A DNA stretch of 64,000 nt from Scyliorhinus canicula (GCF_902713615.1 NC_052154.1:80951072-81015071), one strand, 5' to 3'; positions 14,200 through 64,000 are shown, counted from the first letter of the stretch. Notes: generated by a model not told the origin, from the sequence alone. Program-made: numbers and translations.

Positions 14200-17100
14200 A
14201 AGCACAAAGAATAAAGAACAAAGAAAAGTACAGCACAGCCCTCCAAGCCTGCACCGACCATGTTGCCCGTCTAAACTAAAATATTCTACCCTTCCGGGGT
14301 CCGTTTCCCTCTATTCCCATCCTATTCATGTATTTGTCAAGATGCCCCTCAAATGTCACTGTCGTCCCTGCTTCCACCACCTCCTCCGGCAACGAGTTCC
14401 AGGCACCTGCTACCCTCTGTGTGAAAAAGATGCCTTGTACATCTCCTCTAAGCCTCGCCCCTCGCACCTGAAACCTATGCCCCCTAGAAATTGACCCCTC
14501 TACCCTGGGAAAAGGTCTCTGACTATCCACTCTGTCTATACCCCTCATAATTTGGCAGACCTCAACCTCCTTCGTTCCAGTGAGAACAAACCGCGTTTAT
14601 TCAACTTCTCCTCATAGCTAATGCCCTTCACACCAGGAAACATCCTGATAAATCTCTTCTGCACCCTCTCCAAAGTCTTGACATCCTTCCGGTGGTGTGG
14701 TGACCAGAATTAACTCTAACCCTAACCCTAACTATCCTCCAAGTGTGGCCTAACTAAGGTACAATACAGCTCCAACATGCCTTGCCAATTTTTATACTCA
14801 ATGCCCCAGCCAATGAAGGCAAGCATGCCATATGCCTTCTTCAAAACGTCCTCCACCTGTGTTGCCCCTTTCAGTGACCTGTGGACCTGTACACCAAGAT
14901 CTCTCTGACTGTCAATACACTTGAGGGTTCTACCATTCACTGTATATTCCCTACTTGTATTCGATCTTCCAAATGCATTATCTCACATTTGCCGGATTAA
15001 ACTCCATCTGCCATCTCGCCGCATAAGTCTCCAAATGATCTAAATCCTGCTTAATCCTCTGACAGTGCTAATCGCTATTCGCAATTCCACCAACCTTTGT
15101 GTCGTCCGCAAACTTACTAATCAGACCAGTTACATTTTCCTCCAAATCATTGTTATATACTATGAACAGCAAAGGTCCCAGCACTGATCCCTATGGAACA
15201 CAACTAGTCACAGCCTTCCAATCAGAAAAGCATCCTTCCATTGCTACTCTCTGCCTTCTATGACCTAGCCAGTTCTTTTTTAAAAATTATTTTTATTGAT
15301 GCATTTGGAAAATTGTTATAACAGTAACAAACAAAACCATAATAACATAAACATAAACATGATAAACTAGACATTTCCCACCCAACCCCTTCTGTACATC
15401 CCTTAACCATATTGCACCTATCCACACCCCCCACCCCCTCCCTCCCCTTCAGGATGCTTCTTCTGCTGACATTTTAATTTTCCCAGAGAAAGTCAATGAA
15501 CGGCTGCCACCTCTGGGAGAACCCCAACATTGCCCCCTTCAAGGCAAACTTTATTTTCTCCAGCTTGAGAAAACCAGCCATGACACTGACCCAAGTTTCC
15601 ACACTTGGGGTCTTCGAGTCCCTCCACATTAACAGGATCCGTCTCCGGGCTACCAGGGATGAAAAGGCCAGAACGTTGGTCTTTTTCACTCCCTGAACTC
15701 CCGGGTCTTCTGATTCTCCAAAGATCGCTATCTCTGGACTCATCACGACCCGCGTACCTAGCACCTTGGACATTGCCTTGGCAAACCCCTGCCAGAATCC
15801 TCCAGGCTTCGGGCATGCCCAGAACACATCAACATGGTTTGCTGGGTTTCCCGCACACCTTGCACATCTGCCTTCTACCCCAAAAAATGTGCTCATCCTC
15901 GCCGCCGTCATGTGGGCCTGGTGTACCACCTTAAACTGTATTAGACTGAGCCTGGCACATGTTGACGAGGAATTAACCCTGCTTAGGGTGTCTGCACACA
16001 GACCCACCTCTAACTCCCCACCAAGCTCCTCCTCCCACTTGCCGTTCAGTTCCACCACCGGGGTCTCCTCCGCCTCCAACAACTCCTGTTAGATATCCAA
16101 CAGTTTCCCCTTCCCCACCCAGGTACCGGCCACTACTCTGTCCTGTATCCTCCGTGGCGGGATCAGCGGGAAAGCCAACACCTGTTTCCTCAGAATGTAC
16201 CGGACTTGTAAATATCTGAAAACAGTCCCCAGCGGCAGCTTGAACTTATCCTCCAGCGCCTTCAGACTGGGAAAACTCCCGTCTATGAATAGATCTCCCA
16301 TCCGTCTAATTCCTGCTCTCTGCCAACTTCGGAACCTGCCATCTATCCTGCCTGGCGCGAACCTGTGGTTATTGCAAACCGGGTTCCAGACTGATGCACC
16401 CTCCACCCTCCTATACCTCCTCCATTACCCCCAGATCCTCAATGCCGCCACTACCACTGGGCTAGTGGTGTAACAGGCTGGCAAGAATGGCAGAGGTGCC
16501 GTTACCAGTGCTGCCAAACTGGTGCTTTTGCATGACTCTGCCTCCATCCGCTCCCATGCCAACCCCCTCCCCTATTATCCACTTCCTAAACCACTGCTCA
16601 GCAGTAGTTGCAGAAGTTCGGCAGCGCCAGCCCACCCTCCCCCCAACTGCGCTCCAACAACATTTTCTTCACCCATACAAAGCCCGAAATAATCTTGTTT
16701 ACCCGGTTGAAAAAGGCCTTAGGGATGAAGATGGTGAGGCACTGGAAGATAAACAAAAGTCTGGGGAGCACCGTCATTTTCACGGTCTGCACCCTCCCCG
16801 CCAGCGATAGTGGGAGCATATCCCATCTTTTAAAGTCCCCCTCCATTTGCTCCACCAGCCGGGTTAGGTTGAGCCTGTGTAATGCCTCCCATTTCCGAGG
16901 CAGCTGCATTGGCAAGTACCGAAAGCTCCTCTCTACCATCTTGAGCGGCAGCTTCTTCAGTCTCCTCTCCTGCCCCTTTGCGTGGATCATGAACAATTCA
17001 TTTTTTCTAATGTTCAATTTGTACCCTGAGAACCTGCCAAATTCCCCCAAGATCTGCATAATCTCCCCCAACCCCTCCACCAGGTCCGAGATGTAGAAGA

Positions 17101-20100
17101 ACAGATCGTTTGCATACAGCGAAACCCGGTGCTCCACCCCACTCCAAACCAGCTCCTGCCACTTCCTTGATGCTCTCAGCGCCATGGGCAGCGGCTCTAT
17201 AGCCAAAGCAAACAGCAATGAGGAGATGTGGCACCCCTGCCTCGTCCCTCGGTGTAGCTTAAAGTACCACGACCTGAGCCGATTTGTGCACACACTTGCT
17301 ACCACCGCCTGGTAGAGCAATTGCACCCAGTCGATGAAGCCCTCACCAAACCCTAACCTTCCCAGCATCTCCCAAAGATGCTGCCACTCCATCCGATCAA
17401 AAGCCTTCTGCGTGTCCACTGCAACCACCACCTCCGCCTCCTCTCCTTCTGAGGGCATCATAATTACATTCAAAAGCTCCGAACGTTAGCATTGAGCTGT
17501 CTACACTTAATGAATCTGGTTTGGTCCTCCCCTATCACCCCTGGGACACAGTCTTCTATCCTAGTGGCCAAAATTTAAGCCAGCAGCTTGGCACCTACAT
17601 TCAAAAGTGAGATCTTCCTATATGACCTACATTGCTCCGGGTCTTTTTCTCGCTTAAGGATAAGCGAAATCGAGGCCTGTGACATCGTTTGGGGGGGGGG
17701 GGGGGAGGGGGGCGGAGGATTGCCCTCTCTTTAGCCTCATTAAAGGTTCTCATCAGTAGCAGGCACAATACCTCTGAGAACTTCTTAGAAAATTCTACCG
17801 GGTAACTGTCCATCCCCGGAGCCTTGCCCGACTGCATGCCCTCCAGACCTTTAACAATTTCCTCTGCTTCAATCGGGGGCCCCAGCCCCTCGACCAGGTC
17901 CTCCTCCACCCTCGGAAACCTCAACTGATCCAGGAACTTACTCATCCTTTCTACACCCAGCGGGGATTCCGACTCATATAGTTTGCTCTAAAATTCTTTA
18001 AAAACGTCATTCACCGCCCCCCCCCCCGGGTCCAAGACCATATTACCCTCCCTATTCCTCACTCCCCCAATCTCCCTGGCCACTTCTCTCTTCCTAAGCT
18101 GGTGCGCCAACATCCTGCTCGCCTTTTCCCCATACTCGTAGACCATCTCCCTTGCCCTCCTCAACTGCTCCACTACCCTCCCGTGGTCAACAACTCAAAC
18201 TCAACGTGTAGTTTCCGACACTCCCTCAAGTGGCCCGCGTCCGGAGCCTCCGCATATCTCCTATCCACGCAAAGTATCTTCTCCACTAATCTCTCCCTCT
18301 CTGCTCGTTCTACCTTTTCTCTGTGGGACCGAATCGAAATTAGTTCCCCTCTTACAACTGCTTTCAGAGCCTCCCTGCTGATACCTCACCCGTATCGTTT
18401 GTATCCAGGTAATTCTGAATGGACTCACCTGCCTGCAGACTGCTTCCTCTGCTAACAGCCCCACATCCAGCCTCCAGAGCGGGCGCTGTCCTCTCTCCTC
18501 ACTCAACCGCAAATCCACCCAATGCGGGGCATGATCAGAGAATGCAATCAACGAATATTCCGTCCCCACCACCTTCGGAATTAGTGCCCTATTAGAACAA
18601 AATAATCAGTGCAAGAGTAACTTTTATGGACATGAGAAAAATACGAAAACTCCCTCGCCCTCAGCCGCTCGAATCTCCACGGGTCTACCGCCGCCCCCCA
18701 CCCCCCCTTGCTCCATGAAAGCCCTAAACTCCTTTGCCGTGGCAGGTCTCCTTCCGGTCCTGGATGTTGACCGGTCCAGATCAAGATTAATGACCGTGTG
18801 AAAGTCCCCCCATGCTCAATCCATGAGACTCTACGTCTGGGATCTTGCCTAACAGCAGTCTCATAAATCCCACATCGTCCCAGTTCGGAGCATATACGTT
18901 TACAAGCACCACCCGCACACCGTCCTGCTTCCCACTCACCATAATATATCTACACCCCCTTATCTGCCACAATTCTTCCAGCCTCAAACGCCACCCGCTT
19001 GCTAATCAATGTAGCTACCCCCCTGGTCTTTGAGTCCAGTCCAGAGTGAAACACCTGACCAACCCGCCCTTTTCCCAATCTCGTCTGATCAATAATCTTT
19101 AGATGTGTCGCCTGAAGCATTGCTATCTCTGCCCTCAGCCTTGCTCAGGTCCAGCGTTTCCTTTTTCAGCTCAGCGAAACAGTCCTTAAAGAGCTTTATC
19201 TGCTGCTCTTTAGACCACTGAGCCACCACTCCCTGGTCCTGACCCTCAGCCATGCTGCACCGCGATACCAGCTCCGACTGCTTCACTCTATCAGGGCTGA
19301 GTCTTTTCACATGGCCACTTCTAGTCCAATTAGCCATACATCGGAGAGGGAATCCTTCTTAATATTGTCCACTTCACAGATCTATCCCATAAAGTCCGAG
19401 AAAGGTCTGGAAAATAAGTCCGAAAGTCAGTTTCAGGTGGGAGCTATCGAATGTGTGACCAACTCCTCCATGAGCGCCACCGGAAGTCCGACCTAGTTAG
19501 TTCTGCATCCATCTAGGCAGCTCACTCCTGACAACATCCACTACCCTACCTGCACATCTTTGTGACCTCCTCGAAAATCTCTATCAAGCTAGTGAGACAC
19601 GACCTCCCCTTCACAAACCATGCTGCCTCTCGCTAATACGACCGCTTGCTTCCAAATGGGAGTAGATCCTGTCTCAAAGAATTCTTTCCAGTAATTTCCC
19701 TACCACTGACGTAAGGCTTACCGGCCTGTAGTTCCCTGGATTATCCTTGATACCCTTCTTAAACAAAGGAACAACATTGGCTATTTTCCAGTCCTCCGGG
19801 ACATCATCTGAAGACAGTGAGGATCCAAAGATTTCCGTCAATGCCTCAGCAATTTCCTCTCTTGCCTCCTTCAGTATTCTGGGGTATATCCCATCAGGCC
19901 CTGGGGAGTTATCCACCTTAATATTTTTCAAGACGCCCAACACCTCATTTTTTTGGATCTCAATGTGACCCAGGCCATCTGCACACCCTTCTCCAGACTC
20001 AACTTCCACCAATTCCTTCTCTTTGGTGAATACTGATTCATTTAGTACCCCGCCCATTTCCTCAGCCTCCACACATAGACTCCCTCCCCTGTCCTTCAGT

Positions 20101-25540: not shown

Positions 25541-26139
25541 ATCTCTCAGAGGGATTGCCCAGCAGATCATTGGCGTACCCCTAATTGTGACTCTGGGGCA
25601 CCAGGACGCTCTGGGTCGATGTGAGAACTACTCCATCCGTCATGCATTAGTGATACAAAAATAAAAGAATAGAACTGGTGTACACATTGCTGGAGAGCTA
25701 GTGTAGGTGGGAGAATTTTGAATTCTTGGGCCATGTGGATCCTTTCTTGGGAAGCTATTATTTATACATGCTGGATATATTGCATTTTAACAGGGCCAAG
25801 GCCGACACAAAGGTTATTGCGAGTAGTTCTGTGAGTACTGTTCGTACAGGGGCTGAGAAGGGGGAGGTACCGGTCCGGGTGGAGGTAGCCATCATGGAGT
25901 TCTGCACTTGCTAGGCATGGAGAAGAGAAGTTGAGTGTAGATTAAGAAGTTGGAAAACAAGAGGTTTGAAGGCAGACTAAATAAAGGTTGGAAAATTGCT
26001 TTCCAAATATCTGTTTTTGCTTATTGCTAGATGTCTAAATGCAGGAAAAATAGTGAATAACTATATAAACTGCTCTTGCAGCCATATTGCTTATTTAGTT
26101 TGTCCAGTTAACTTCTGGTCAATGAGGCACATTGGAAAC

Positions 26140-28945
26140 AGACCCAGATTGGTTCCAGGCGGACTTCTACAAAAGATTTGCAGCAGCATTGCCCCTGTAC
26201 CTGCGGCAGATGTTCATAGACTCGCTGGCTGGGGGCACACTGCCACCTACACTAGCACAGGCCTCAATCTCGCTGATACCTAAGAAAGACAAGCACCCAA
26301 TGGAATGTGGGTCAGACAGACCCATCTCACTACTAAACATAGATGCCAAAATACTCGCCATGATCCTAGCCAAAAGGCTGGAGAACTGCTTTCCAGAGGT
26401 GGTCGCAGAGGACCAGACGGGCTTTGTCAAAGTTAGACAACTAACATCGAAGATCAGGTGCCTGCTGAACATGATCATGACTCCATCCGGGGAAAGAACA
26501 CCAGAGGTGATCTTCTCCCTGGATGCAGAAAAGGCCTTCAACAGAGTCGAGTGGAAGTACCTCATAGAGGCACTGGAGCGGTTCAGGCTTGGAACAGGGT
26601 TCACCTCCCAAGTGAAGCTCCAGTACAAGACTCCCATGGTGAGCATATGGACAAACAATACTAGCTCGAAGTACCTCCAGCTGCACAGGGGCACCAGGCA
26701 GGGATGTCCGCTGTCTCCGTTGCTGTTCACCCTAGCAATCGAACCACTAGCGATCACTCTCAGAACAGCAAAATACTGGAGGGGATTGAAAGGGGAGGTA
26801 AAGAGTACAGAGTCTCACTGGGGTTCCAAATCACTCTTGACTTGTCGAGGAAGTCAAAAAGGACCTGCAAGGATGGAACACAATTCCACTCACTCTCGCG
26901 GGGAGAGGGCAGACGATCAAAATGAATGTGCTGCCCAGGTACCTCTTCTTACTTAGATCCATCCCGATCTATATCGTCAAAGCCATTTTCAACTCACTGG
27001 ACAAGTTAATCATGGCTTTTGATGGGGGTGGAGGGGGGGGGGGGGGTGCGGGGAGGAATCCAAAAGAATGTCCTACAGAAAACAAAGTCCAGGGGAGGGA
27101 TTAAGGAGCCAGAAGCAGAGTGGGTGTGCGCAGAGGATGCCTCCTGCAGAGGGACCTCGCTCTGGGCCTTCGGCATGGCGGCACACCCATACCCACCCAA
27201 AAAACACCCCAGCAGCCCAGTGGTGTTAGCCACCCTCCAGAATTGGGAACCAATTATGGCAATAATTCAGCCTGACCGAAATGTCTGTCAAAGCCCCCAT
27301 CTGCAACAACTATAGGTTCGCACCCGTCCTCACTGACATCACCTTTAAAAGGTGGAGGCAGGACGGGGGGGGGCACTGACAGTTAGGGACAAATACACCA
27401 TCGGCAGGATCACAACACTGGATGAGCTGACGGAAAGATTGCAGCTAGCTAAGGGCAACAAACTCAGAAACCTGCAGCTTAAAAACTTCCTACAAAAGGA
27501 GACAAGGGCGTACCCACGACCCCCACGACAGGTGCTACTAGAGGAATTGCTGGATGCAAACATTCTAGGTAGAGGACACTGTAGTGACGTGTACGAACGA
27601 CTAGTAGAGAGGGCCTGGACCCAACGAGGAGGAAATGGGAAGAAGACTTGGGGCTCGAAATAGGGTGGGGACTTTGGCACGAAGCACTACATAGAGTCAA
27701 CTCCAGCTCCGCATGCACAAGACTCAACCTAACGCAACAAAAGAAGGTACATAGAGCCCACTTAACAAGAACCTGAATGAGTAGGTCTTCCCGGAGGTGG
27801 AGGACAGATGTGAACGGTGGCAAGGCGGCCCGGCCAACCATGCCCACATGTTCTGGTCTTGCCCCAGACTTCCTGGATACTGGACTGCCTTCTTCGAGGC
27901 AATGTCCAATGTGGTGGGGATGAGGGTGGAGCCGTGCCCGAAAGTGGTGGTCTTCAGGGTACCAGACCAGCCAGACCTCTTCATGGGGAGGAGGGTGGAC
28001 GTCCATGCCTTTACTTCCCTGATCGCCCGCCTTAGAATCCTGCTAGGCTGGTAGTCGTCAGCACCAACTAAAGCTGCAGACTGGCTGTCTGACATTTTGG
28101 AATTTCTCTAAATGGAGAAAATCAAGTTTGCCATCCGGGGGTCAGAAGATTGCTTCCTCAGAAATGGGAGCCATTCACCAAACTGTTCCGCCGCCTGTTC
28201 ATGGCCAACGAGCAAAACAAATAGAGAAACAAGTAGCCAAGAGCAAGGGAAAGTAGCCAAGACATGAGAGAAGTGAGGGAAGGGAGGGAGGACCCGGGGG
28301 GGGGGGGGGGGGGGGGGGTTGGAGCAGTCTAAGAGGAGGTAGCCAAACACAGCTGAAAAGAAAGAGGAGCTGCAGAGAGGGGGTGGGGGTAGGGAGGAAA
28401 GGGGGCAAGGGGGGCAGGGAAGAGTGAAGGACAAGGGGAGGAGAACAGTAGAGGGGAGCCAGAGGGGAGCAAAGACGGGGGAACACAAACTGTAAGGAGA
28501 ACACTGTAAGGGAAACTACATCGACCACAACAAACATAGCAGGGCAAAAGAGAGTAAGAAAGTACAGGAGGAAGGAATGGCAGACAGCCGATGCGGAGGC
28601 AAGCGCACAGAAACAAAAGAAAACCGACTGGGAGAAGGAAGGGCTACTCAGGCGCTCCTCCCACCTAGTCTTGTTTTCCTTGTTCTGTATGTATTTTTTA
28701 TGGACAATAAACAAACAGAAAAGAAGGGAGAGAGAAAGCTCCCCCCCCCCCCCCCCACCCCCATGACATATATAATGGAATGTTCTCTTCGTTGCTTTTC
28801 TGTATATACTCCTCCACTGTTTTTATTTTACCACCCCTTGGTTTTTTTTGTTGTATAGTGTTCTTGTTATTTCTTTTTGGTTTCTCTCAGATTTCATCTG
28901 TAAATATACCTTGTATAAAACCCAATAAAAACATTCTTTAAAAAT
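26140..28945 (+). mobile_element. 5'-truncated L1/Tx1 LINE, same subfamily as 1-2789
   Basis: ORF 26132..26956 is highly similar to ORF 10..903; internal deletion at about 26820; ends cccaataaaaacattctttaaaaa. Confidence 0.92.
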
Positions 28946-33300: not shown

Positions 33301-35182
33301 GCACTACCGCTTCTGAAAGAAACAGGTTTTCAAGATGACGCATTGGATTTTTATTTTACGAATCTGTTCCTTTATCATCTCCAGGTCCAATTCTATGATA
33401 TACAACAGGCAGTCAGGAACAATCTTAACGAGAAACCTTCTTCATAAACAGTCCAGAATTATGAATTATTTTGCATAAATTGGCTTTATTAGACGTTTTG
33501 TGACAAAATGCAAAAGCTACAGTTTATGTGTCAATGAGATCAATAATATAATACTTTAAGGCGTGAAAAAATGCATTACACGTGGAGGTTTAAAACTTAA
33601 CTTTACTAAAGCTTGTGCAATCATCAATAAGAAAAGGCAGACAGTGCATTTACGAAAATGCGTTTAGTCATATTTGAAAATTGAGTACATAATAGTGGGA
33701 CAAATGACATTAGACGAAATATTGATATTTTTTCCCTTTGCAATGATAGTGCGGATCGGAAAGTTACAGTCACGCTTATACAATAGAACATCGGTTTACG
33801 GTAATCATTGGGTGTTGCTATAATTACATATTGAAACACACAATGTAAAACAACTGTGGCTATTGAATGTTGGATACGCCCATAGCGTGTTGCAATATTG
33901 TTCCATTCTTAGAACCCATCCCTTCACATTTCGAGACGCGCAAGTGATACACGTCCTCTGCCAAGCTCGAATAAACAATTCACCTTGTCAATATTTAGCA
34001 ACACGTGTGTAGCTAAGACCAAAACATTACAATCCCTTGATAATGGTTTACACGTTATTAGAACTGTCAAACCACGCACAATCATCGGTTACATGCCGTA
34101 AATAGACTATTTCGGTTAATCAATTGTGAAAATGATCTGCACTTCTTTGTCTCCATATTGAATCAAAGCATGGTTTCAGGTAAGCAAATTAAATGTTAGG
34201 TTCAAATTGAAATATCATGACAAGTGAACAGCTGCCCATTTAATTGCATTATTCGGGATCTCTCTCTTTCGGTACAAACGTTCTCGTAGTAACATGAACT
34301 GAACGAGTCAAGTCCCCACAGATTTTTTTAAAAAGTAGATCGTACGTGTCTTCCCCTGCAGACGTATTTGAAGAAACAGCTATGGCAATAGAGAAAGGTA
34401 CTGCAGCAAATGTCGATGTCATGGAAGTGAAAATAATGATAATTTAACGCTAAAGGTTAATGATGCATGGATGAGGGATACATGGAGTACATTTCAGAAT
34501 GGAATTCGATGTATACTTAAAAAGGAGAAACTGGATGAGCTCGGGAACGTATCAAGAGTGGGAACAATGGGGAAACTCTTTCAAAATTTCAGCACTGGTC
34601 AGTGGACAGTATGTCTCCTTATCAGTTATATGAATACATAATTCTACATGGTCCATGTGGAGCTAGATATTTGCAAAGTAAAAAACAACTCGAAACTCAT
34701 TTAAGTAAATTGAGGGACACGTTTGTGCACTACAGCCTCGCGTAGTTTGTATCAGACAGGCTCGAGGTCAGAATGCAGTCACGGGATATGGAAACCAACA
34801 CATTGTGTTTCCGATGTTACGCAACAAAGTGAGCACTAATGGTTAACTTGCAAGAAAAAAATCCAATATAATCGATTTTTATTGATTACAGTTAATTAAA
34901 TGCCACGAGACTTTTGGCTTATCATTGTAGCTGAAAGAAGAGATGAGTCATTATATTTTTTAAAACTTATTTAACATTAACGTATGTCAGGATATTTACG
35001 TTTTTCATAAAATTAGCGAAAATAAAGCTCTTCAAATAAACTAAATAGCAAGTGACTACCACATATCGTGTGAGAGGCACGGTGTCGCACAGTACACATA
35101 CAGGTGGTGCCCGTCCGGCGGAAGGAAGCGATCGGCACAGACAACCGGTTGATTTTTGTCTCCAGTTGCCAGCCTCTTTCAC

Positions 35183-35308
35183 TCAACTTTGCTTTTGTAT
35201 CCGCAGTTGGGCATACTCTGTGCCCCTTTCGTTAGGTTTGCCTCGGCCTAAGTCAGTCAGTGCGACACTCGCGAAAATCGGATCGTCACCGGCTTTCCTC
35301 TGTTGCGC
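35183..35308 (-). CDS. Ig receptor gene 1, terminal cytoplasmic exon (AQQRKAGDDPIFASVALTDLGRGKPNERGTEYAQLRIQKQS*)
   Basis: Acceptor ttttccaaatattgatcttccag, phase 0, open to TGA at 35183-35185; ITSM-like TEYAQL at 35204-35221. Confidence 0.8.
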   Translation of the reverse strand, partial: AQQRKAGDDPIFASVALTDLGRGKPNERGTEYAQLRIQKQS

Positions 35309-35523
35309 CTGGAAGATCAATATTTGGAAAATATGGTTCACTTGTCGTTTTCCAAGTTCCCTGGTGAATTGTTGAAAACATTCACCAGAAGGACTCGCAA
35401 ATAATCTTTAGACAATATGCGGGCAAAATCCACTGAGACATATACGCTGCCTTACCGCATGAATGTTGATGTTACATGTGAGTTTATCTAATGTGTCAGT
35501 CAGGCATACCTGAGCATACTAAC

Positions 35524-35595
35524 CTCTTCACGTTTACACCTTGGAGTTTTGCTCAAATCTAATGTGGCATAATGCAGACATTCAGATGCTGTACC
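35524..35595 (-). CDS. Ig receptor gene 1, cytoplasmic ITIM exon (GTASECLHYATLDLSKTPRCKREE)
   Basis: Acceptor gttttcctttttgtaccacgcag, donor gttagt, 72 nt, phase 0-0; canonical LxYxxL at 35560-35577. Confidence 0.8.
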
Positions 35596-35635
35596 CTGCG
35601 TGGTACAAAAAGGAAAACATCGATTACACGGCGCG

Positions 35636-35985
35636 TTCATTGAATTCCTCAAGTGCAGACGGAGGCCATTCGGCCCACAGAGTCTGCACCGATCTTCTAA
35701 AAGAGCACATTACTTAGTCCCACTTCCCCTCCCTATTCCCGTAACCCCATGACCCCACCACACCCGCACATCTTTGGACACTAAGGAACAATCTTTCAGT
35801 ATGGCTAATCCACCTAATTTGCACATCTTTGGACTGTGGGGGGAAACCGGAGCACCCAGATAAACCCCACGCAGACGCGGGGAAACGTGCAAACTCCACG
35901 CAGTTTGTCACCCAAGGCCGGAATTGAACCCATGTCCCTTGCGCTGTGAGGAAGCAGTGCTAAGCACTATCCCAGCGTGCTGCCC
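35636..35985 (-). mobile_element. V-SINE (intronic)
   Basis: V-domain, tRNA-like head and ggccattcggccc tail. Confidence 0.85.
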
Positions 35986-36126
35986 ATTGTGCTCGGTATG
36001 CTCACCAGTTTACAGTCATGCTGATCAAACATTGAACAGATTTATTTGGGTTCGAGCTGAATTAAGCAAACATTTATATAAGTGCAGTGGCCACAATACC
36101 AAATATTAAAACCTGCAAATGCTCAC

Positions 36127-36149
36127 TCGACGTGATTGCTGCAGCAATG
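36127..36149 (-). CDS. Ig receptor gene 1, candidate 23-nt linker micro-exon (xLLQQSRR)
   Basis: cccatttcag acceptor, gtgagc donor; phase 1 to 0 bridges the TM exon to the ITIM exon. Confidence 0.55.
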
Positions 36150-36215
36150 CTGAAATGGGCTCATTACGTAAAATCGAATTTCAAAGGATAAATTAATTTA
36201 TGAATCGTTATTAAC

Positions 36216-36270
36216 TCGGTAGATTTTCAATGACATTGGTGGTTTTCTTTTCTGAGCATTTATCAATGTT
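36216..36270 (-). CDS. Ig receptor gene 1, alternative candidate linker exon (NIDKCSEKKTTNVIENLP)
   Basis: ctcgttcatttctgcag acceptor and weak gttaat donor; phase 0 to 1 fits only if the TM exon uses the donor at 37102. Confidence 0.4.
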
Positions 36271-37145
36271 CTGCAGAAATGAACGAGGTGGCAAGTAAAT
36301 TTCCATATCTGATCGGAATATCTGACCGGGACAGAACAAGTACTTTTATTAAATAGACTAAAACTGGTCTGACATGATTGTAACATTAACTTTCCATTCT
36401 ATCTATCGTTCCTGATATTTCAACAAACTGTCAATGAATGAATTAACGCACCAACTCCTCGCGCCGGTCCCCGCTTTTTATATGTTCTTCTTTATCTATA
36501 AATAATTGAAATTTAATTATTTATCATATTATGTTGTATTATAAAAAATATATTGAAAAAAAGACACTTACTTCATTTACATATCGGAGATGACAAAGAT
36601 ATGTGGATGGTAAGAAACACCCGGAGTATGCCAAAAATGTTTGAAATCCTAACAGTTTGTAACGGTCAGCAATAGACTACCTTTTGAATTTTCATCGGAA
36701 GCCAACGTATTATTTGAGGCGGCGGGAATCGAAGGACATAGAAATACAACGGGAGATATTGCGTGGCTTAGCACACCCGAAGAGCAGTATGGCCCACTCA
36801 TGCTCCCATCATATCTACCTATGTGTGCAACTATTGCTTAGCCACATTCAAACTAATTGCCCCTCCAATACGACGTGGTTTGCAAAGTGATTCTGTGTTA
36901 CGATACTCTTCATTTACCGTTTGAAACTTTTTTTTGAAACCACTGGATTTTTTTCTATTTTTGTTACAGTTATGAAGGCATCTCCGAGTTGTACCATATA
37001 ATTACAACAATTCGTACGATCTTAAAACCATAAGACTGTTTTCAACTTTAACTCCCATTCGGCTTCTCTTTCTCCTGCATTACCCGGAAACTGACATTCA
37101 CCTTGAGATTTTTTACAAAAATCAAGGGTCCACAGTAGATCCTAC

Positions 37146-37259
37146 CAACATTCTTCTGCAATCGGTTCCGCCACCCAATCACGATCAGAAACGCCACCAA
37201 GGCGAATCCAGCCACTGCACACCCTGGAATCCAATAGGAAACTGACATCGGGACAATAT
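37146..37259 (-). CDS. Ig receptor gene 1, transmembrane exon (alternative 3' end at 37102)
   Basis: aatcttgcag acceptor, phase 1; DIVPMSVSYWIPGCAVAGFALVAFLIVIGW then basic RNRLQK; donors gtagga (phase 1, 37146) or gtgaat (phase 0, 37102). Confidence 0.82.
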
Positions 37260-37866
37260 CTGCAAGATTAATTTTAACATGATGTCATAGCGGATGTTGA
37301 ATCCATAATAGGCGTCAAGGTAGTTCGTTATTTAAGCTAGAGTGATTATTTTACTAACTCTGCCGTAGTCAACAGGATGTTTAAAATGTTTAAATACAAA
37401 GTGTTAATTTTAGCTAAAATATCTGAAGCACTTTTTCCTCGAATAGATGACGCATTCTTGATTAATCTGCGAAGCGACCAACGATTACGGATCTCAAATA
37501 TATGCCTTTGGAGAGTTTCTAAGGAGGAGGGGTCTGTTTTTCATGATCAACAAACTGTTCTTAAAATTATTTATTAACGTACAGTTTGAGAAAATCGAGA
37601 TACTTTACACAAGCATTTAATCGATGTCCGCACAAAATCTGGACTGCAGCAATCGGTTAGAAATCCCCTTCAATTCTCTCGACCGTGGTTATCAAAGCCA
37701 GGATCCCATTGGAGGTGGACAGTTATCACGAGCATACTACCCTCCCAAACAGCCTAGCAAGTCACTCAGTTCAAGTGCAGTTCGGGATGCGGGATGAATG
37801 TTGGCCTTCTCATGGGTCTGCAGTTCCCATGACGGAATATGAACAGCCTTCTGCATTAAACTCTTA

Positions 37867-38170
37867 GGGGCAGCATGGTAGCATGGTGGTTAGCATAAAT
37901 GCTTCACAGCTCCAGGGTCCCAGGTTCGATTCCCGGCTGGGTCACTGTCTGTGGGGAGTCTGCACGTCCTCCCCGTGTGTGTGTGGGTTTCCTCCGGGTG
38001 CTCCGGTTTCCTCCCACAGTCCAAAGATTTGCGGGTTAGGTGGATTGGCCATGCTAAATTGCCCGTAGTGTCCTAAAAAGTAAGGGGGGAGGGGGGGTTA
38101 TTGGGTTACGGTATAGGGTGGATACATGGGATTGAGTAGGGTGATCATTGTTCGGCACAACATCGAGGGC
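37867..38170 (+). mobile_element. V-SINE (intronic)
   Basis: ggggcagcatggtagcatggtggttagc head, ggttcgattccc B box, V-domain. Confidence 0.9.
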
Positions 38171-38376
38171 ATGGACGGTGCGTCATAGAAGTTGGCCAGA
38201 GGATTGATTTCAGAACTCTGCATTGGAAGTAGACAAACGAGGGGCAGTATCGCGAGTTACATCGCGAGATGTCCGTGCACAATCAACTTGCCGACAGCTC
38301 CTGCTACGGTCTGAATGCAGGAAGAGTAGGCAATAGTAAATAATAAAACGCTCGACATAGAAAATAGAAACTGGCC

Positions 38377-38590
38377 GGCAGGGTAGCACAGTGGTTAGCA
38401 CAGTTGCTAACAATAACCCAGGTCATTGTGTTGAGTATAAACGTTCGCCCTGTGTCTGCGTGGCTCTCCTCCGGGTGCTCGGGCGTCCTCCCACAGTCCA
38501 AAGATGTGCAGGTTCGGAAGGTTGCCCATGTTAAATTGCCCCTTAGTGTCGAAAAAAAGGGGTGGGGTTACGGGGTTACGGGGATAGCTT
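38377..38590 (+). mobile_element. V-SINE (intronic, degraded)
   Basis: Head ggcagggtagcacagtggttagc and V-domain. Confidence 0.8.
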
Positions 38591-38977
38591 GAGGTGTCGG
38601 CTCAGGTATCCGACCTCAGCCGACACCTCAGCCTCCCCTGAGGTAGGGTTCTCTTTCCACTCTTCTGCAGTGTAGATTCTAATACTATATGATTAATAAC
38701 ATTCGGGTGAGGTCACGTTATACTGGGAAATGTGAACGGGTGTTTAATATATTTAAGTGCTGCACAAATAAATTCCAAAGCAAACATTGTTTGAGGGAGA
38801 ATGCTTATGTATCTGGCGATATAACCTAGTTTTGCAACACATCGGGTTAAATTCCCTTGTAAAGATACGACTTTGATGTTCGCATTGATAATTCCCACGA
38901 TGTTTCTGAGGCCAATTTCTGTATTATTAATATGCATGAACATATAACTCTATTCAAAAGTAGCTGGTGCTCCGTAC

Positions 38978-39280
38978 CTTTAGAAACAGTGTAGGGGGCC
39001 ACAGCTGGAGTCTTGAGGGACATATGCGATACCAAACAAGTATAGTTGCTGACTGTCCTGACAGTCGTCGACTCAATCAAAGTGCTCGAAACTTCAAACA
39101 GTCCATCTCTGTTCTTCACTTTAGTGGTGTTTATTCCGAGTGAAGTTTCCCTGCCATTTTTATACCAAGTGAGAGTGAAATTTTCTGGATAAAACGCAGC
39201 CGTTTCACAGACTAGAATCAAGGACGTAGACGATTTCAATTCAGATGTCCTGGAGTGAAGCTTCAATGGTGTTGGGGCCA
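38978..39280 (-). CDS. Ig receptor gene 1, C1-set Ig exon
   Basis: tgtcccgcag acceptor, gtacgg donor, 303 nt, phase 1-1; LVCETAAFYPENFTLTWYKNG, NRDGLFEVSSTL, YTCLVSH. Confidence 0.92.
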
Positions 39281-40314
39281 CTGCGGGACACACAATTAAC
39301 ATAGTTGAGCTACTGTGCACTATTGGAATAAATCAAATATATTTCTGATTGACTTTCGCTCTGTTTTCCTACATTAGGACCAGTGGCAATTCTAATCTCC
39401 TGTCTTTTTACTATTATGCACACCATCTAATTACAATTCACCTTTCTCTCTCATAAAGACCGCTTTCGGTTAACTTTACCATGGTGTCAAACCCAAAGTT
39501 CTCGAATTACTTGGAAAGCAAGGCGGAATGATTTGCTAACCAATGTTTGGTTTACATCGCCTGTAAACCAAGGCGATATAAATCAAACATCATTCGGCTT
39601 TGGTGGGCAAATCGGCTTACTGATTCCTCGATGTGCTTGATGTGTGGTGATAGTGAAAAAATAGGCATTTTCTTGACGATAAATGGAACGATTCATCGTC
39701 TCTGAACAATTCAGAACCCGAGCATGACCAATGGAAACAAATTATATTCAGTTGAAACTCTCGAGGTTTCATCAACATTGCCTCTCTGTAGTGTCGTATT
39801 TGTTGAGAAGTTCGAGACGTGACAAGCATACGTGTTTCAAACTCCAGTCCATTGAGTGAATCAACTGCTTTATAGTTAGCAGCACATTAGCATCCAAATC
39901 AATACCGTATCATCATGTGAGATTTCATTTCAGAAATATTAATCTCCAAGTGATTAATGAGGACAGACAGAATATCAAAACTGGACGAACAACCATGTAC
40001 ATTTTGGGAGAGGCCCGTTAATATGGACAATTTTCCGTCAGCTATATTTTAGGAATTCATTACAAATTTCTGCTATTAGTTAATTTATTTGTACTCATAA
40101 TTAGAAGCTAGTCGATTTATATTGCGAAGATATGCAAACTTCACCGTGTCACATCGCATGCATAATTAGTATTTCGATACAGAGCACCCAGATATACATT
40201 AACTTAACTTAAATATGTTCATAGACATGTTTTACTGACAGAAGTGATGCACAGCCACGATTGTTGTGTTTGATATATTTATAGCGGTCTCGTTCTCCTG
40301 TGCTCCAAACTTAC

Positions 40315-40635
40315 CATGCACAATTAGATGCGATCCGGTTCCATTTCTTCCAAGTAGTCCATGACGGATCACAGAGCAGTGATAGATTCCAGCGTCTTCC
40401 AATGTCGCGCCCAGCAACTGAAAGAACCCGCTCACTTTACCTTCCTGACCAAACCGTTTTCTCTTGTCTGCGCTTGAACGAAGGTATTCATTCTCGCCAT
40501 TCTTCCACCATAATATCCGGACCCAGGATTGTTCTTTAAAAATGGGTAATATGCAGTAGAAGGTGACGTTCCCCCCTCTGGATATAGTCACTTCTTCTGG
40601 TGTTTGAGACACACTGAAAGAAACGCGGTCCGCAG
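40315..40635 (-). CDS. Ig receptor gene 1, V-set exon with germline-joined J-like strand
   Basis: atttctgacag acceptor, gtaagt donor, 321 nt, phase 1-1; FYC, WWK, DAGIYHC, GRNGTGSHLIV. Confidence 0.93.
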
Positions 40636-40803
40636 CTGTCAGAAATATAGACAAACACAGGTTAATCGCATGAGCTAAGGCATGAGGATGGACGATCAAA
40701 ATTTAACCCAGACAAAGGAAATAAGATTAGCTAAATTATTATGAAAATTACCTAGGAGGAAGTTTATTAATTAAGGTAAGTGGGCAAATAAATAAATTAG
40801 TAC

Positions 40804-40858
40804 CTGTGTGACTAACCCCTCGGAGAATGATCCATATAAAAACCATACAAGTTGCCAT
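40804..40858 (-). CDS. Ig receptor gene 1, leader exon (MATCMVFIWIILRGVSHT)
   Basis: ATG, hydrophobic 18 codons + 1 nt, gtacta donor, phase 1; 168-nt intron to the V exon. Confidence 0.85.
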
Positions 40859-40916
40859 TTTTATCAATGGACCGAATCGTTGAGTCTCTGCGAGCGTGTA
40901 ACGGTGAAAAATAGTT

Positions 40917-40964: not shown

Positions 40965-42493
40965 CAACCGGGTGCTCAGAAATCAAGATTCGTTTTGTGA
41001 AGTGGGATTTTCTCATTTATGCAATTATTTTACATCTGGAATCACTTGTTTTACGGACATCGAAAGGTAAGGGAAATATAGATTTTCTAACTCTGAATTT
41101 ACTCACATCGCCGAGTCGGTTATGTTTCTTGGCAGCTAACGGCATTCTAACCAGGATGGAGAACAGCGGCGAAGCGCCGACCAATCGTGGCTTGCTCGAA
41201 TATGTCAAAGACTATATAGGGGTTGAGAACGGCCATATTCACAAATATTGTAATACTGGGCAGTGTATTTATTGTCTGTCTGATTTGGGAAACCGCACGG
41301 AGAGACTCAAAGGGGATCTGTGAGCTGACAACAGCTTGGCTGTCACCATGCACACGTGGAGGTTGGAGACGTGGTGCCAGTTTGGAAGGTGAGCGCAGTG
41401 AGTTAATTGAAAGGAGGGGTGACATTGGTTTCCAATGAGGCCGTGTCTTCGGAAAAACCCGCGCTTTATATCACAACTCTCTGATAAAAATCACCGGCTG
41501 CTTATTCCGCATTGGGACCACGCAGAACGAGCTGGGAATGGGGTAAGGCATGTTTAGAGGGTGCTTGCCGGAAGAAGAAAATACGTTTCTGAGGAACAGA
41601 GTATCTGGGATGTGGTCGGCTGTGCAAGAGAGTTTTGTTCCCGTAGACAAGTGTTAAAGTCTTTAAAATTATCTGTCACCAGACGAGAAGGATTTCACTT
41701 GCAGGTTGCGAGTTGCCGGGTGGGTGGTGGGCAGATCGGTGGGGGGGGGGGGGGGGGGGGGGTGCGCTAGGAGGTAGCGGTGGATGGTGAAGGTGAGAGT
41801 TGACGCTGGATAGGGAAGCAAATATTTGATTATCGTTACGCTCCACATGAGCGGGATCGGTGGCACACAGCCATAGCGCCATGGACCCGGGTTTGATTCC
41901 AACCTTGGGTGATTGCGTGTGTTTCCACCGGGTGCTCCGGTTTCGTACCACAGTCCAAATACCTGCAGGTTAGGTGGCGTTGCGGGGTTAAGGTGGGGCG
42001 AGTGCCTGGGTAAGGTGCTCTTTCGGAGGGTTGGTGCAGACTGTAGGGATTCTATGGATTCTGTTGATACCAATACATAAACAGTGAAGACTAATTGTTG
42101 CAAAGGTACCAAAACAACGAAAGTCATTTATCTGAATTCGCATAGCATTCGTAAAGAGGTTAAGGAAAGCATCACACTCATGGAAAAGTCACATAACCAC
42201 ACAAAGATAAATGACAAGTCAGTTGATTGGTCAGGACATAGCGAATGGCAAAGATTTACTAAAAGGTTAATCAGGAGGAATTAATTAGAATAAAAGAGGA
42301 TGTTACCTAGAAATGTAAAGGAAAACGACATTAATAATTTCTACAGATATTTAAAAAGGACAATTAAGTCAATTCAGTGTTGGTCCTCTGGAGGGTGACA
42401 TTGGGGAGTTAATAGTAGCTAATCAGTTAATAGCGGGTGAAATAAACAAATATTTTACTTCTGCCTTCATTATAGAGCACACAAAAACAATCC

Positions 42494-62744: not shown

Positions 62745-62928
62745 CCGCAAAAGTAACTTCAAACAAAATGGAGCAATTCCCTAAACTTATGACTGTAGCC
62801 AGGGGGGACAATGTTTCCATATTCTGCACATTTTGCATATATGAATATGCTCCTGAAGTTTCTTGGTGGCGACGCGGCGCGGAACGTTTCTGGAAGCAGA
62901 CAACGGAAAGAGATCCACTCCAAAGAAA
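62745..62928 (+). pseudogene. Truncated duplicate V exon (pseudo-exon)
   Basis: AAKVTSNKMEQFPKLMTVARGDNVSIFC...WWRRGA matches the exon at 63334. Acceptor AG is replaced by CG (62743-62744), with a 1-nt deletion at about 62888; homology ends before the F-strand Cys. Confidence 0.88.
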
Positions 62929-63067: not shown

Positions 63068-63122
63068 ATGTCGATCAGAGTTACAGCTCAGTACATGGCT
63101 CTTCTGGGTCTGATGTGGCCAG
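63068..63122 (+). CDS. Ig receptor gene 2, leader exon (MSIRVTAQYMALLGLMWP)
   Basis: 55 nt, phase 1, gtatgt donor; same length as the gene 1 leader; 211-nt intron to the V exon. Confidence 0.8.
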
Positions 63123-63333
63123 GTATGTTGAGTTGTTTAATGTTGCCGTTGTAGAATGGCTTAAATGGTATTTTAAGTATACAACTGTATTGTTGTAAAA
63201 AAAAATAGTTGCTGCGCTTCTTCAATTCCACTGCTGGTGTTTCTTCATTGTTTTTGAATTTTCCTCCATTTAGTTATTTTCCTTCTCTGACGTATGCAGT
63301 TGTTATCCACATTCTTTTCTACTTATTTCCTAG

Positions 63334-63639
63334 CCGCCAAAGTAACTTCGAACAAAGTGGAACAGTTCCCTCAACACCTGACGGTAGCCAGGGGTGACAA
63401 TGTTTCCATGTTCTGCACGTTTTCCATATATGAAGATGCTCCTGAAGTTTCTTGGTGGAAACGCGGCGCTGAATCTTTGCTGGAACCAGACAACAGGAAG
63501 AGATTTAGTCCAAAGAAGGGACGGAGTACATTAGAAATTCTAAATGCGAGTATCACAGACTCCGGAATGTATTACTGCAAAGTCAAACATCAACAGGTCA
63601 AGATTGGGGATGGAAGTGGCTCCCAGCTCACTGTGTTTG
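63334..63639 (+). CDS. Ig receptor gene 2, V-set exon with germline-joined J-like strand; rest of gene beyond window
   Basis: ttctacttatttcctag acceptor, gtaagt donor, 306 nt, phase 1-1; MFC, WWK, DSGMYYC, GDGSGSQLTV. Confidence 0.92.
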
Positions 63640-63764
63640 GTAAGTGTAATTGTTCCAGGGAAAGACCGCTTTCCAGCTGTGTGTGATTTATGTAATTTTA
63701 GCTGTTATTACTAGTTGAAAATCCGGCGATAACGGATTCGTTTTACACTGCTGTAGGTTTTCAT

Positions 63765-64000
63765 AGAATCATAGAATTTACAGTGCTGAAGGAGGCCATT
63801 CGGCCCATCGAGTCTGCACTTGGAAAGAGCAACCTACCCAAGCCCACGCCTTTACCCTTTTCCAGTAACTCCACCAAAACCTTTGGACACTGTGGGAAAA
63901 ATTTGCACAGCCAATCCGCCTAACCTGCACATCTTTGGTCTGTGGGAGGAAACCGGAACACTTGGAGGAAACCCACGGATACACGGGAAGAACGTGCAGA
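63765..64000 (-). mobile_element. V-SINE (intronic, cut by window edge)
   Basis: catagaatcatagaa tail and V-domain. Confidence 0.85.

What the first reader, a model, noticed from the sequence alone, without database searches (positions are those of the whole stretch)
35183..40858. Complete non-rearranging VJ-C1 receptor with an ITIM and an ITSM-like tail
Seen in sequence: six exons with canonical GT-AG boundaries, plus one or two linker micro-exons. Leader, V, C1 and TM are joined in phase 1, as is typical for the Ig superfamily. The V domain carries a J-like G strand (GRNGTGSHLIV) in the same exon. A true C1 domain follows (FYP, YTCxVxH). The TM is uncharged. Two small cytoplasmic exons, absent from the ORF track, encode LHYATL (canonical ITIM) and TEYAQL (close to the TEYASI/TEYATI motifs of SIRP-alpha and PD-1). 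Established knowledge: C1 domains are largely confined to antigen receptors, MHC/tapasin, SIRP and B7-H6-like proteins, and germline VJ-C1 genes are discussed as relatives of the pre-RAG antigen receptor. Inference: this is an inhibitory, SHP-1/2-recruiting, antigen-receptor-like gene of a cartilaginous fish, possibly a poorly described family.
Basis: partly seen in the sequence, partly recalled or inferred. Interest (0 to 1): 0.8.

Follow-up and report, generated by a model that had tools for sequence, protein, structure and literature searches.

The report
Catshark germline V-C1 inhibitory receptor gene
This is a real, transcribed catshark gene for a membrane receptor built like one antibody or T-cell-receptor chain that needs no gene rearrangement and ends in inhibitory-type tyrosine motifs. 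It is one copy of a large, unnamed gene family of sharks, rays and chimaeras, so it is interesting but not unique.

Summary
On the minus strand, seven GT-AG exons give a 344-residue type I protein: leader, V, C1, TM, a 44-nt micro-exon, and two cytoplasmic exons.

- **Domains:** Pfam calls V-set and C1-set. AlphaFold models (pLDDT 89) match antigen-receptor-type V domains and MHC II beta2/UrIg2 C1 domains.
- **Transcripts:** spliced contigs from two independent studies join the TM exon, the micro-exon 36452-36495, 35524-35595 and 35183-35308.
- **No rearrangement:** there is no RSS, and V and the J-like strand share one exon.
- **Family:** relatives form a multigene family across Chondrichthyes. 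It carries only inconsistent automatic names (SIRP-alpha-like, tapasin-related-like, B7-H6-like). The tail pattern is conserved from chimaera to sharks: ITIM, VYAQ, ITIM, TEYAxL. This copy keeps only Y288 (LHYATL) and Y335 (TEYAQL).
- **Twin:** a catshark paralogue (XP_038661932.1) has a 95% identical V domain but only a 65% identical C1, an Arg in the TM and a 5-residue tail. That suits an activating partner.
- **Limits:** SHP recruitment is inferred.

The scan has already followed up similar genes elsewhere in this genome.

The parts
40804..40858 (-). Leader exon (ATG at 40858). Encodes MATCMVFIWIILRGVSHT plus one base; phase 0 to 1.
   Evidence: GT donor. The hydrophobic leader resembles that of the Heterodontus orthologue P0161. 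No RNA coverage was seen.
40315..40635 (-). V exon with the J-like G strand (GRNGTGSHLIV) in the same exon; phase 1-1.
   Evidence: Pfam V-set E 2.4e-7. AF2 model pLDDT 89. An X1 contig covers 40349-40635 and ends at the acceptor. No RSS heptamer or nonamer.
38978..39280 (-). C1-set constant domain exon (FYP, YTCLVSH); phase 1-1.
   Evidence: Pfam C1-set E 1.2e-12. Best PDB sequence hit is UrIg2, E 2.4e-20. AF2 pLDDT 89.5, and Foldseek matches MHC II beta2 and UrIg2. An X1 contig covers 39021-39280.
37146..37259 (-). Stalk, uncharged transmembrane segment (WIPGCAVAGFALVAFLIVIGW) and stop-transfer; phase 1-1.
   Evidence: Hydropathy scan. RNA contig covers 37146-37252 and joins to the micro-exon.
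36452..36495 (-). 44-nt cytoplasmic micro-exon (DKEEHIKSGDRREEL); phase 1 to 0.
   Evidence: Joints 36495/37146 and 35595/36452 in X1 and X2. Conserved in orthologues as ...NRSEEL.
35524..35595 (-). Cytoplasmic exon with the ITIM LHYATL (Y288).
   Evidence: RNA contigs in X1 and X2. It aligns with the family's first ITIM.
35183..35308 (-). Last coding exon. Holds a degenerate ITIM, PIFASV (Y to F), the ITSM-like TEYAQL (Y335) and the TGA stop.
   Evidence: RNA contig 35176-35308. TEYA[EQ]L is conserved from chimaera to sharks.
34883..35182 (-). 3' UTR, at least about 270 nt, with a poly(A) signal near 34883.
   Evidence: X2 and X13 contigs cover 34913-35264. Signal scan.
63068..63639 (+). Head-to-head neighbour: leader (63068-63122) and V exon (from 63334) of a paralogous VJ-type gene. 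The rest of the gene lies beyond the window.
   Evidence: tblastn gives 33% identity to this V. Pfam V-set/I-set. Leader and phase. 72% identical to P0063, a different subclade.

Best explanation
This is an intact, transcribed gene of a catshark (Scyliorhinus, most likely S. canicula). It encodes a 344-residue type I membrane receptor: signal peptide, a germline-joined VJ-type V domain, one C1-set domain, an uncharged TM, and an 89-residue tail with an ITIM (LHYATL, Y288) and an ITSM-like motif (TEYAQL, Y335).

It is the inhibitory-type member of a multigene family found in sharks, rays, skates and chimaeras. That family contains both long-tailed ITIM/ITSM forms and short-tailed forms with an Arg in the TM, so it is a paired-receptor family.

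Likely mechanism (inferred, not shown):
1. The V domain binds an unknown ligand.
2. Src-family kinases phosphorylate Y288 and Y335.
3. SH2-domain phosphatases of the SHP-1/SHP-2 type dock there and damp activation.
4. The near-identical-V twin (XP_038661932.1) would signal the opposite way, through an ITAM adaptor bound by its TM Arg.
For: - **Gene structure and reading frame:**
- **Domains:** Pfam V-set and C1-set. AF2 models with pLDDT 89 and 89.5. V neighbours are TCR V-beta, shark VNAR, VL, CD79b, NKp30 and PD-1. C1 neighbours are MHC II beta2, Ig delta C, B7-H6 C and UrIg2.
- **Transcripts:** spliced RNA contigs from two studies join TM, micro-exon, cyt1 and cyt2.
- **No rearrangement signal:** no RSS.
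- **Family size and range:** an exhaustive V search gave 72 proteins at E<=1e-10. All V+C1 relatives looked up are chondrichthyan, and they lie in clusters of consecutive accession numbers.
- **Two classes:** long tails with an uncharged TM, against short tails with an Arg in the TM.
- **Conserved tail:** ITIM - VYAQ - ITIM - about 20 aa - TEYA[EQ]L from Callorhinchus to sharks.
- **Twin:** P0001 has V 95% and C1 65% identical. Tree path lengths are 0.039 for V and 0.65 for C1.
Against: - No biochemical evidence exists for phosphorylation, phosphatase binding or a ligand.
- This copy has lost two of the family's four tyrosines: ITIM2 is PIFASV, and the VYAQ stretch is spliced out. The remaining two lie 47 residues apart, wider than the usual tandem spacing.
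- Contig depths are low (2-9), though contig depth is a poor measure of expression. Tissue is unknown because the runs are coded.
- The leader-V, V-C1 and C1-TM junctions were not seen in the RNA rows shown.
- The window's own product did not appear in the protein database searches. It may therefore be unannotated or modelled differently.
Confidence: 0.8

Rival explanations
1. It belongs to the NKp30 (NCR3) lineage, perhaps to the 'shark NCR3 family' published in 2021 (Kinlein et al., Immunogenetics). If so, the family is already described, or it is an NKp30 relative that has kept a C1 domain.
For: - NCR3 of four mammals ranks 3, 5, 11 and 13 among Swiss-Prot structural matches of the V model, and 3noi ranks 39 in PDB.
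- The family's G strand, GNGTGSxLxV, with an N-glycan sequon, resembles what I recall of the human NKp30 G strand. That is memory only and was not tested.
- V-only relatives with ITIM tails exist in the same clusters (P0006, P0027, P0106).
Against: - Identity to NKp30 is only about 20%. CD79b, Ig kappa V and CD8-beta score equally well.
- NKp30 has no C domain.
- No protein named NCR3, and none from the nurse shark, appeared among the named hits.
- The paper and its sequences (MT914154-61) were not available.
Confidence: 0.2
2. It is the chondrichthyan counterpart of PRARP, the pair of linked non-rearranging VJ(-C1)-TM-ITIM genes described in chicken, with orthologues in bony fish, amphibians and reptiles (Fu et al. 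2019).
For: - The architecture is the same, and the gene sits in a closely linked head-to-head pair.
- PRARP is cited as a VJ gene of the MHC or its paralogous regions (PMC10751288) and as a VJ-type family (PMC11599192).
- The best non-chondrichthyan V-C1-TM-ITIM hit is a teleost family (Anguilla P0138 and relatives), with 32% V identity.
Against: - C1 similarity to the teleost family is marginal (27% over 41 residues).
- I do not know that P0138 is a PRARP.
- The PRARP description is from my memory of the abstract; the paper is not held.
Confidence: 0.15
3. It is a true SIRP family member, as NCBI's commonest automatic name (PTPNS1-like / SIRP-beta-1-like) implies.
For: - SIRP-alpha and SIRP-gamma chains are among the better PDB sequence hits of the C1 domain (E 2.4e-13 and 2.9e-11).
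- The tail carries ITIM plus TEYAxx motifs, and paired inhibitory and activating forms exist.
Against: - There is only one C1 domain, where SIRPs have V-C1-C1. No second C1 exon is present in the window or in the orthologues.
- SIRP does not appear among the top 30 Swiss-Prot or top 50 PDB structural matches of the V model.
- The same family is equally often auto-named tapasin-related, B7-H6-like, CD276 or MHC II beta.
Confidence: 0.07
4. It acts as a B7-like ligand (V-C1, as in B7-H6) rather than as a receptor.
For: - PD-L1 V domains are among the best single-sequence PDB hits of the V exon (E 0.002-0.01).
- The B7-H6 C domain matches the C1 model at 30% identity.
- Some relatives are auto-named NCR3LG1-like or CD276 homolog.
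Against: - The J-like GxG...LxV strand and the antigen-receptor-type V neighbours.
- Conserved tandem ITIM/ITSM tails, and Arg-TM short-tailed twins. These are hallmarks of paired receptors, not of B7 ligands.
Confidence: 0.1
5. It is a decaying copy, transcribed at a low level but no longer functional.
For: - Two of the four family tyrosines are lost. A remnant of the VYAQ stretch (…RYA followed by a stop codon) lies just past the cyt1 donor.
- RNA depth is low.
- It is absent from the protein database hits.
Against: - The 344-codon frame is intact across seven exons, with canonical splice sites.
- All Ig-fold hallmark residues are conserved.
- It is correctly spliced in two studies.
- Its V domain is kept 95% identical to that of a paralogue.
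Confidence: 0.07

Closest known systems
UrIg / UrIg2 (elasmobranch non-rearranging VJ-C1 genes; PMC12227049, PDB 9dmx)
   Same: - A germline-joined VJ exon with a split leader, and C1-set constant domains.
- Restricted to cartilaginous fish.
- UrIg2 is the best PDB sequence hit of the C1 exon (E 2.4e-20 summed over three domains) and a structural match.
   Different: - UrIg has three C domains and is secreted by the liver. UrIg2 has 9-11 C domains. This gene has one C1, a TM and an ITIM/ITSM-like tail.
- Per-domain C1 scores are only 29-31 bits, at about 24-30% identity.
- The UrIg2 V domain is not among the V hits.
NKp30 (NCR3)
   Same: A non-rearranging VJ-type V domain. The V model matches NCR3 structures and models. 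The family includes an activating form with an Arg in the TM (P0001).
   Different: NKp30 has no C domain, and in mammals it is an activating single-copy gene. V identity is about 20%. This gene is inhibitory-type and sits in a multigene family.
SIRP-alpha/beta paired receptors
   Same: A V domain with a J-like strand followed by C1-set domain(s), ITIM plus TEYAxx motifs, and inhibitory and activating twins with near-identical V domains.
   Different: One C1 domain rather than two. No SIRP among the top V structural matches. The family appears to be chondrichthyan only. CD47 binding is unknown.
PRARP (Fu et al. 2019; cited in PMC10751288 and PMC11599192)
   Same: As I recall the abstract: a linked pair of non-rearranging VJ(-C1)-TM genes with ITIMs.
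   Different: PRARP was described from bony fish to birds.
Teleost NITRs and other paired Ig-like receptors (KIR, LILR, PILR)
   Same: The logic is the same: germline V-type recognition domain, ITIM-bearing inhibitory forms and charged-TM activating forms, all in gene clusters.
   Different: In NITRs the second domain is I-type, not C1. There is no detectable sequence relationship beyond the Ig fold.

Membership tests
Unnamed chondrichthyan V-C1 receptor family (auto-named PTPNS1-like, tapasin-related-like, NCR3LG1-like) | V domain with WWKxGE and GNGTGSxLxV, followed by a C1 with PPTPLK...FYP...LTWYKNG...YTCLVSH | tested here: met
   V is 65-68% and C1 62-69% identical to P0161, P0002 and P0162. 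It fits the consensus of 63 V and 66 C1 sequences.
Unnamed chondrichthyan V-C1 receptor family (auto-named PTPNS1-like, tapasin-related-like, NCR3LG1-like) | Tail pattern ITIM - VYAQ - ITIM - about 20 aa - TEYA[EQ]L | tested here: inconclusive
   The first ITIM and TEYAQL are present. VYAQ is spliced out, and the second ITIM is PIFASV.
Paired inhibitory/activating receptors (a kind, not a clade) | A twin with a near-identical ectodomain, a charged TM and a short tail | tested here: met
   P0001 (S. canicula XP_038661932.1) has V 95% identical, TM ...FRYTVGGLAF... and a 5-residue tail. Adaptor binding was not tested.
Rearranging antigen receptors (Ig/TCR) | V and J as separate segments flanked by RSS | tested here: not met
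   V and the J-like strand share one exon, which ends in a splice donor. There is no heptamer or nonamer. An RNA contig is collinear with the genome across 40349-40635.
SIRP | Three extracellular domains, V-C1-C1 | tested here: not met
   There is a single C1 exon between V and TM. tblastn finds no second C1 in the window. The orthologues are V-C1-TM.
SIRP | Binding of CD47 or surfactant proteins | not testable with these tools
   No ligand data.
NKp30 / NCR3 | A single VJ-type V domain with no C domain | tested here: not met
   A C1-set exon is present.
NKp30 / NCR3 | V domain groups with NKp30 in a phylogeny; MHC linkage | not testable with these tools
   There are only weak fold matches. 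The shark NCR3 sequences and the chromosome position were not available.
UrIg / UrIg2 | VJ followed by three or more C1-type domains; secreted, or with a long C-domain array | tested here: not met
   One C1 followed by a TM. For the UrIg anatomy.
PRARP | Architecture: VJ, C1, TM and ITIM, in a closely linked gene pair | tested here: met
   The family definition is from my memory of Fu et al. 2019, which is not held.
PRARP | Sequence orthology to chicken or bony-fish PRARP | not testable with these tools
   No authenticated PRARP sequence was available. The teleost family around P0138 has 32% V identity.

The most novel reading that the evidence does not exclude
This family may be a direct, little-changed descendant of the pre-RAG VJ-C1 antigen-receptor precursor lineage. 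It could be the NKp30 lineage with its ancestral C1 domain retained. It would have been kept in cartilaginous fish as clusters of paired inhibitory and activating receptors whose V exons are homogenised between twins. If so, it offers a living model of how an antigen-receptor-like chain signalled before rearrangement existed.
Probability: 0.15. Interest if true: 0.8.

Novelty: new member of a known kind. Interest (0 to 1): 0.5.

Why it matters
Germline-joined VJ-C1 genes are the class of molecule thought to have been split by the RAG transposon to create antibodies and T-cell receptors. Only a few such families are characterised: UrIg/UrIg2, NKp30, PRARP and SIRP.

This locus shows that catsharks transcribe a membrane-bound, inhibitory-type VJ-C1 receptor. 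It has an activating-type twin with an almost identical V domain. Both belong to a large family shared by sharks, rays and chimaeras, which databases label inconsistently.

The family deserves a proper name, a phylogeny against NKp30, PRARP, SIRP and B7, and a synteny check against the MHC and its paralogous regions. As a single gene it is one more copy of something this scan has met repeatedly in this genome.

Tried and rejected
- **C1 homodimer prediction:** no verdict (score 0.01). This is not evidence either way.
- **PDB profile searches with the family V and C1 alignments:** multi-domain chains such as titin and Ig heavy chains dominate the ranking, because their scores are summed. These searches could not place the family.
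- **Literature:** the key papers are not held. They are Kinlein 2021 (shark NCR3), Fu 2019 (PRARP), Ohta 2019, Flajnik 2012 and Flajnik 2023. Searches for PRARP, VJC1 and SIRP+shark+ITIM found nothing on this family.
- **DNA of the twin's locus:** could not be fetched because the file was too large. I therefore could not measure how far the V-exon homogenisation extends.
- **Alternative donor for cyt1 at 35541 or 35509:** considered and rejected, because the RNA contigs use 35524.
- **UrIg/UrIg2 membership:** rejected on domain number and weak per-domain similarity.
- **Rest of the window:** holds only LINE reverse-transcriptase debris, so it gave no synteny markers.

Full report
**1. Anatomy**

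The gene lies on the minus strand. Reading the sequence and translating the exons gives seven exons, all with AG acceptors and GT donors:

| Exon | Coordinates | Length | Phase |
|---|---|---|---|
| Leader | 40804-40858 | 55 nt | 0 to 1 |
| V | 40315-40635 | 321 nt | 1-1 |
| C1 | 38978-39280 | 303 nt | 1-1 |
| Stalk/TM | 37146-37259 | 114 nt | 1-1 |
| Micro-exon | 36452-36495 | 44 nt | 1 to 0 |
| cyt1 | 35524-35595 | 72 nt | 0-0 |
| cyt2 | 35183-35308 | 126 nt | ends in TGA |

The product is 344 residues long. It carries five N-glycan sequons. One of them is NGT, inside the J-like G strand.

Its 'one or two micro-exons' is a single 44-nt exon.

**2. Domains**

- Pfam assigns V-set (E 2.4e-7) to the V exon and C1-set (E 1.2e-12) to the next exon.
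- AlphaFold2 models built on family alignments are confident: pLDDT 89.0 for V and 89.5 for C1.
- By Foldseek, the V model is nearest to TCR V-beta, shark VNAR, VL, CD79b, NKp30 and PD-1 in PDB. In Swiss-Prot it is nearest to CD79b, Ig kappa V, NCR3 and CD8-beta. All of these are VJ-type V domains.
- The C1 model is nearest to MHC class II beta2 domains and UrIg2 in PDB. In Swiss-Prot it is nearest to Ig delta C, MHC II beta and the B7-H6 C domain.
- By sequence, the best solved relative of the C1 exon is shark UrIg2 (E 2.4e-20 over three domains, 29-31 bits each). IgA1, SIRP-alpha and MHC II beta follow.

So 'true C1' holds.

The V exon runs without interruption through GRNGTGSHLIV into a splice donor. 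No RSS heptamer or nonamer is present. The gene is therefore germline-joined.

**3. Transcription**

I laid contigs of three likely RNA runs and raw reads of one RNA run on 34910-40900.

- One 356-nt contig of run X1 (depth 9) reads 37146-37252, then 36452-36495, then 35524-35595, then 35176-35308.
- The joints on either side of the micro-exon also occur in run X2, from a different study. The skipped stretches have GT..AG ends on the minus strand.
- X1 contigs also end exactly at the V acceptor (40635) and at the C1 acceptor (39280).
- Contigs of X2 and X13 cover the 3' UTR down to 34913. A poly(A) signal lies at 34883.
- Contig depths are low, though contig depth is a poor measure of expression, and the tissues are coded.
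- The leader exon had no coverage. It rests on its splice donor and on its likeness to the leader of the Heterodontus orthologue P0161.

**4. Relatives**

An exhaustive phmmer search of 1.84 billion representatives with the V exon gave 151 hits at E<=0.001, of which 72 were at E<=1e-10. Look-ups and word-index searches show the following.

- Every V+C1 relative that I looked up is chondrichthyan. The genera are Scyliorhinus, Mustelus, Heterodontus, Heptranchias, Stegostoma, Chiloscyllium, Mobula, Hypanus, Hemitrygon, Narcine, Pristis, Amblyraja, Leucoraja and Callorhinchus.
- Their accession numbers are often consecutive on one chromosome, which points to gene clusters.
- The names are automatic and contradictory. 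They include PTPNS1 (SIRP-alpha)-like, SIRP-beta-1-like, tapasin-related-like, NCR3 ligand 1-like, CD276 homolog and MHC II beta-like.
- The closest full-length orthologues are P0161 (Heterodontus; V 65%, C1 65%, tail 50%), P0002 (Mustelus) and P0162, P0163 and P0166 (Heptranchias).
- The best non-chondrichthyan V-C1-TM-ITIM hit is a teleost family around Anguilla P0138. Its V identity is 32% and its C1 similarity is marginal.

**5. Paired-receptor pattern**

A hydropathy and motif scan of the family separates two classes:

- long-tailed forms with an uncharged TM (…GCAVGGLAFLVL…) and two to five ITIM/ITSM-type motifs;
- short-tailed forms with an Arg near the outer end of the TM, often with a DH pair at the inner end.

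S. canicula XP_038661932.1 (P0001) is of the second kind. Its V domain is 95% identical to this gene's, but its C1 is only 65% identical. Path lengths in quick ML trees are 0.039 for V and 0.65 for C1. This discordance is what exon-level homogenisation between an inhibitory receptor and its activating twin would produce.

An X2 contig with 10 differences over 40410-40675 encodes a third V variant. It may be an allele or a further paralogue.

**6. The tail**

I aligned the tails of orthologues from chimaera to sharks. The conserved pattern is:

1. ITIM1 (xxYAxL)
2. KTPRxKxEE
3. VYAQ
4. ITIM2 (LTYATL)
5. about 20 residues
6. TEYA[EQ]L

Conservation of TEYAxL over the whole class argues for function. 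This copy keeps ITIM1 (LHYATL, Y288) and TEYAQL (Y335). Its ITIM2 is PIFASV, with Y replaced by F. Its cyt1 donor lies upstream of the VYAQ stretch, and a remnant of that stretch, followed by a stop codon, sits in the intron.

The gene has, however, a reduced version of the family tail.

**7. Mechanism**

*Shown:* an intact, spliced mRNA for a type I V-C1 membrane protein with two tyrosine motifs.

*Inferred from established knowledge of ITIM/ITSM receptors (SIRP-alpha, PD-1, KIR and others):*

- Ligand binding by the V domain leads to phosphorylation of Y288 and Y335.
- This recruits SHP-1/SHP-2-type phosphatases.
- The Arg-TM twin would pair with an ITAM adaptor.

The ligand, the expressing cell type and the oligomeric state are unknown. 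A C1 homodimer prediction gave no verdict.

**8. Comparison with known families**

- It is not a rearranging receptor, because it has no RSS.
- It is not UrIg or UrIg2. It has one C domain against 3 to 11, it is membrane-bound with a signalling tail, and per-domain similarity is weak.
- It is not a SIRP by architecture, having one C1 rather than two. SIRP is also absent from the top structural matches of the V model.
- It is not NKp30 as defined in mammals, because a C1 domain is present. The V domain is NKp30-like at the level of fold and G-strand motif.
- It has the architecture that I recall for PRARP. Neither the paper nor the sequences were available to test this.

The same limitation applies to the published shark NCR3 family. 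No hit carried an NCR3 name or came from the nurse shark. That is only weak evidence that the families differ.

**9. Context and verdict**

The rest of the window is LINE debris. The exception is a head-to-head paralogue whose leader (63068-63122) and V exon (from 63334) lie about 22 kb upstream on the other strand.

Earlier notes of this scan report similar pairs 125 kb away and on other pieces of this genome.

It is a further member of a large, little-studied family, not a one-off.

Noticed in passing
window 63068-64000 (+): A head-to-head paralogue. It has a 55-nt leader (63068-63122) and a V exon from 63334 with the J-like strand IGDGSGSQLTV. It is 33% identical to this gene's V and 72% to P0063, so it belongs to another subclade. 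The rest of the gene lies outside the window.
   Followed up: partly
window 62747-62911 (+): A partial V-like fragment just upstream of the neighbour's leader. Its translated start closely resembles the start of the neighbour's V (AKVTSNKMEQFP… against AKVTSNKVEQFP…). It is probably a duplicated, truncated V exon.
   Followed up: no
window 41033-41143 (-): An upstream ORF (MPLAAKKHNRLGDVSKFRVRKSIFPLPFDVRKTSDSR) matches the N-terminus of the S. torazame RefSeq model P0164 and resembles that of Mustelus P0002. It has no signal peptide. Those models probably start in a 5' exon or UTR and miss the true leader exon.
   Followed up: partly
window 35710-36100, 37710-38710: SINE-like repeats in two introns attract enormous contig depth (up to about 890,000) and many spurious joints in the RNA runs. 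They are repeat families found in many transcripts, not part of this gene's mRNA.
   Followed up: no
window 40410-40675 (-): An X2 contig with 10 differences encodes a third V variant. It shares T11A, L29F and N45H with P0001 and has four changes of its own. It runs 40 nt past the V acceptor and carries 63 unplaced 5' letters. It may be an allele or another paralogue.
   Followed up: partly
window 35496-35523 (-): Just past the cyt1 donor, the intron reads in frame as VSMLRYA followed by a stop codon. This looks like a remnant of the family's conserved ERTVYAQ motif, so this copy seems to have shifted its donor upstream.
   Followed up: partly
window 10-903, 8066-9602, 16598-17473, 26132-26956: LINE fragments with reverse-transcriptase and endonuclease domains (Pfam RVT_1, Exo_endo_phos_2) fill much of the window. 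No other host gene was seen.
   Followed up: partly
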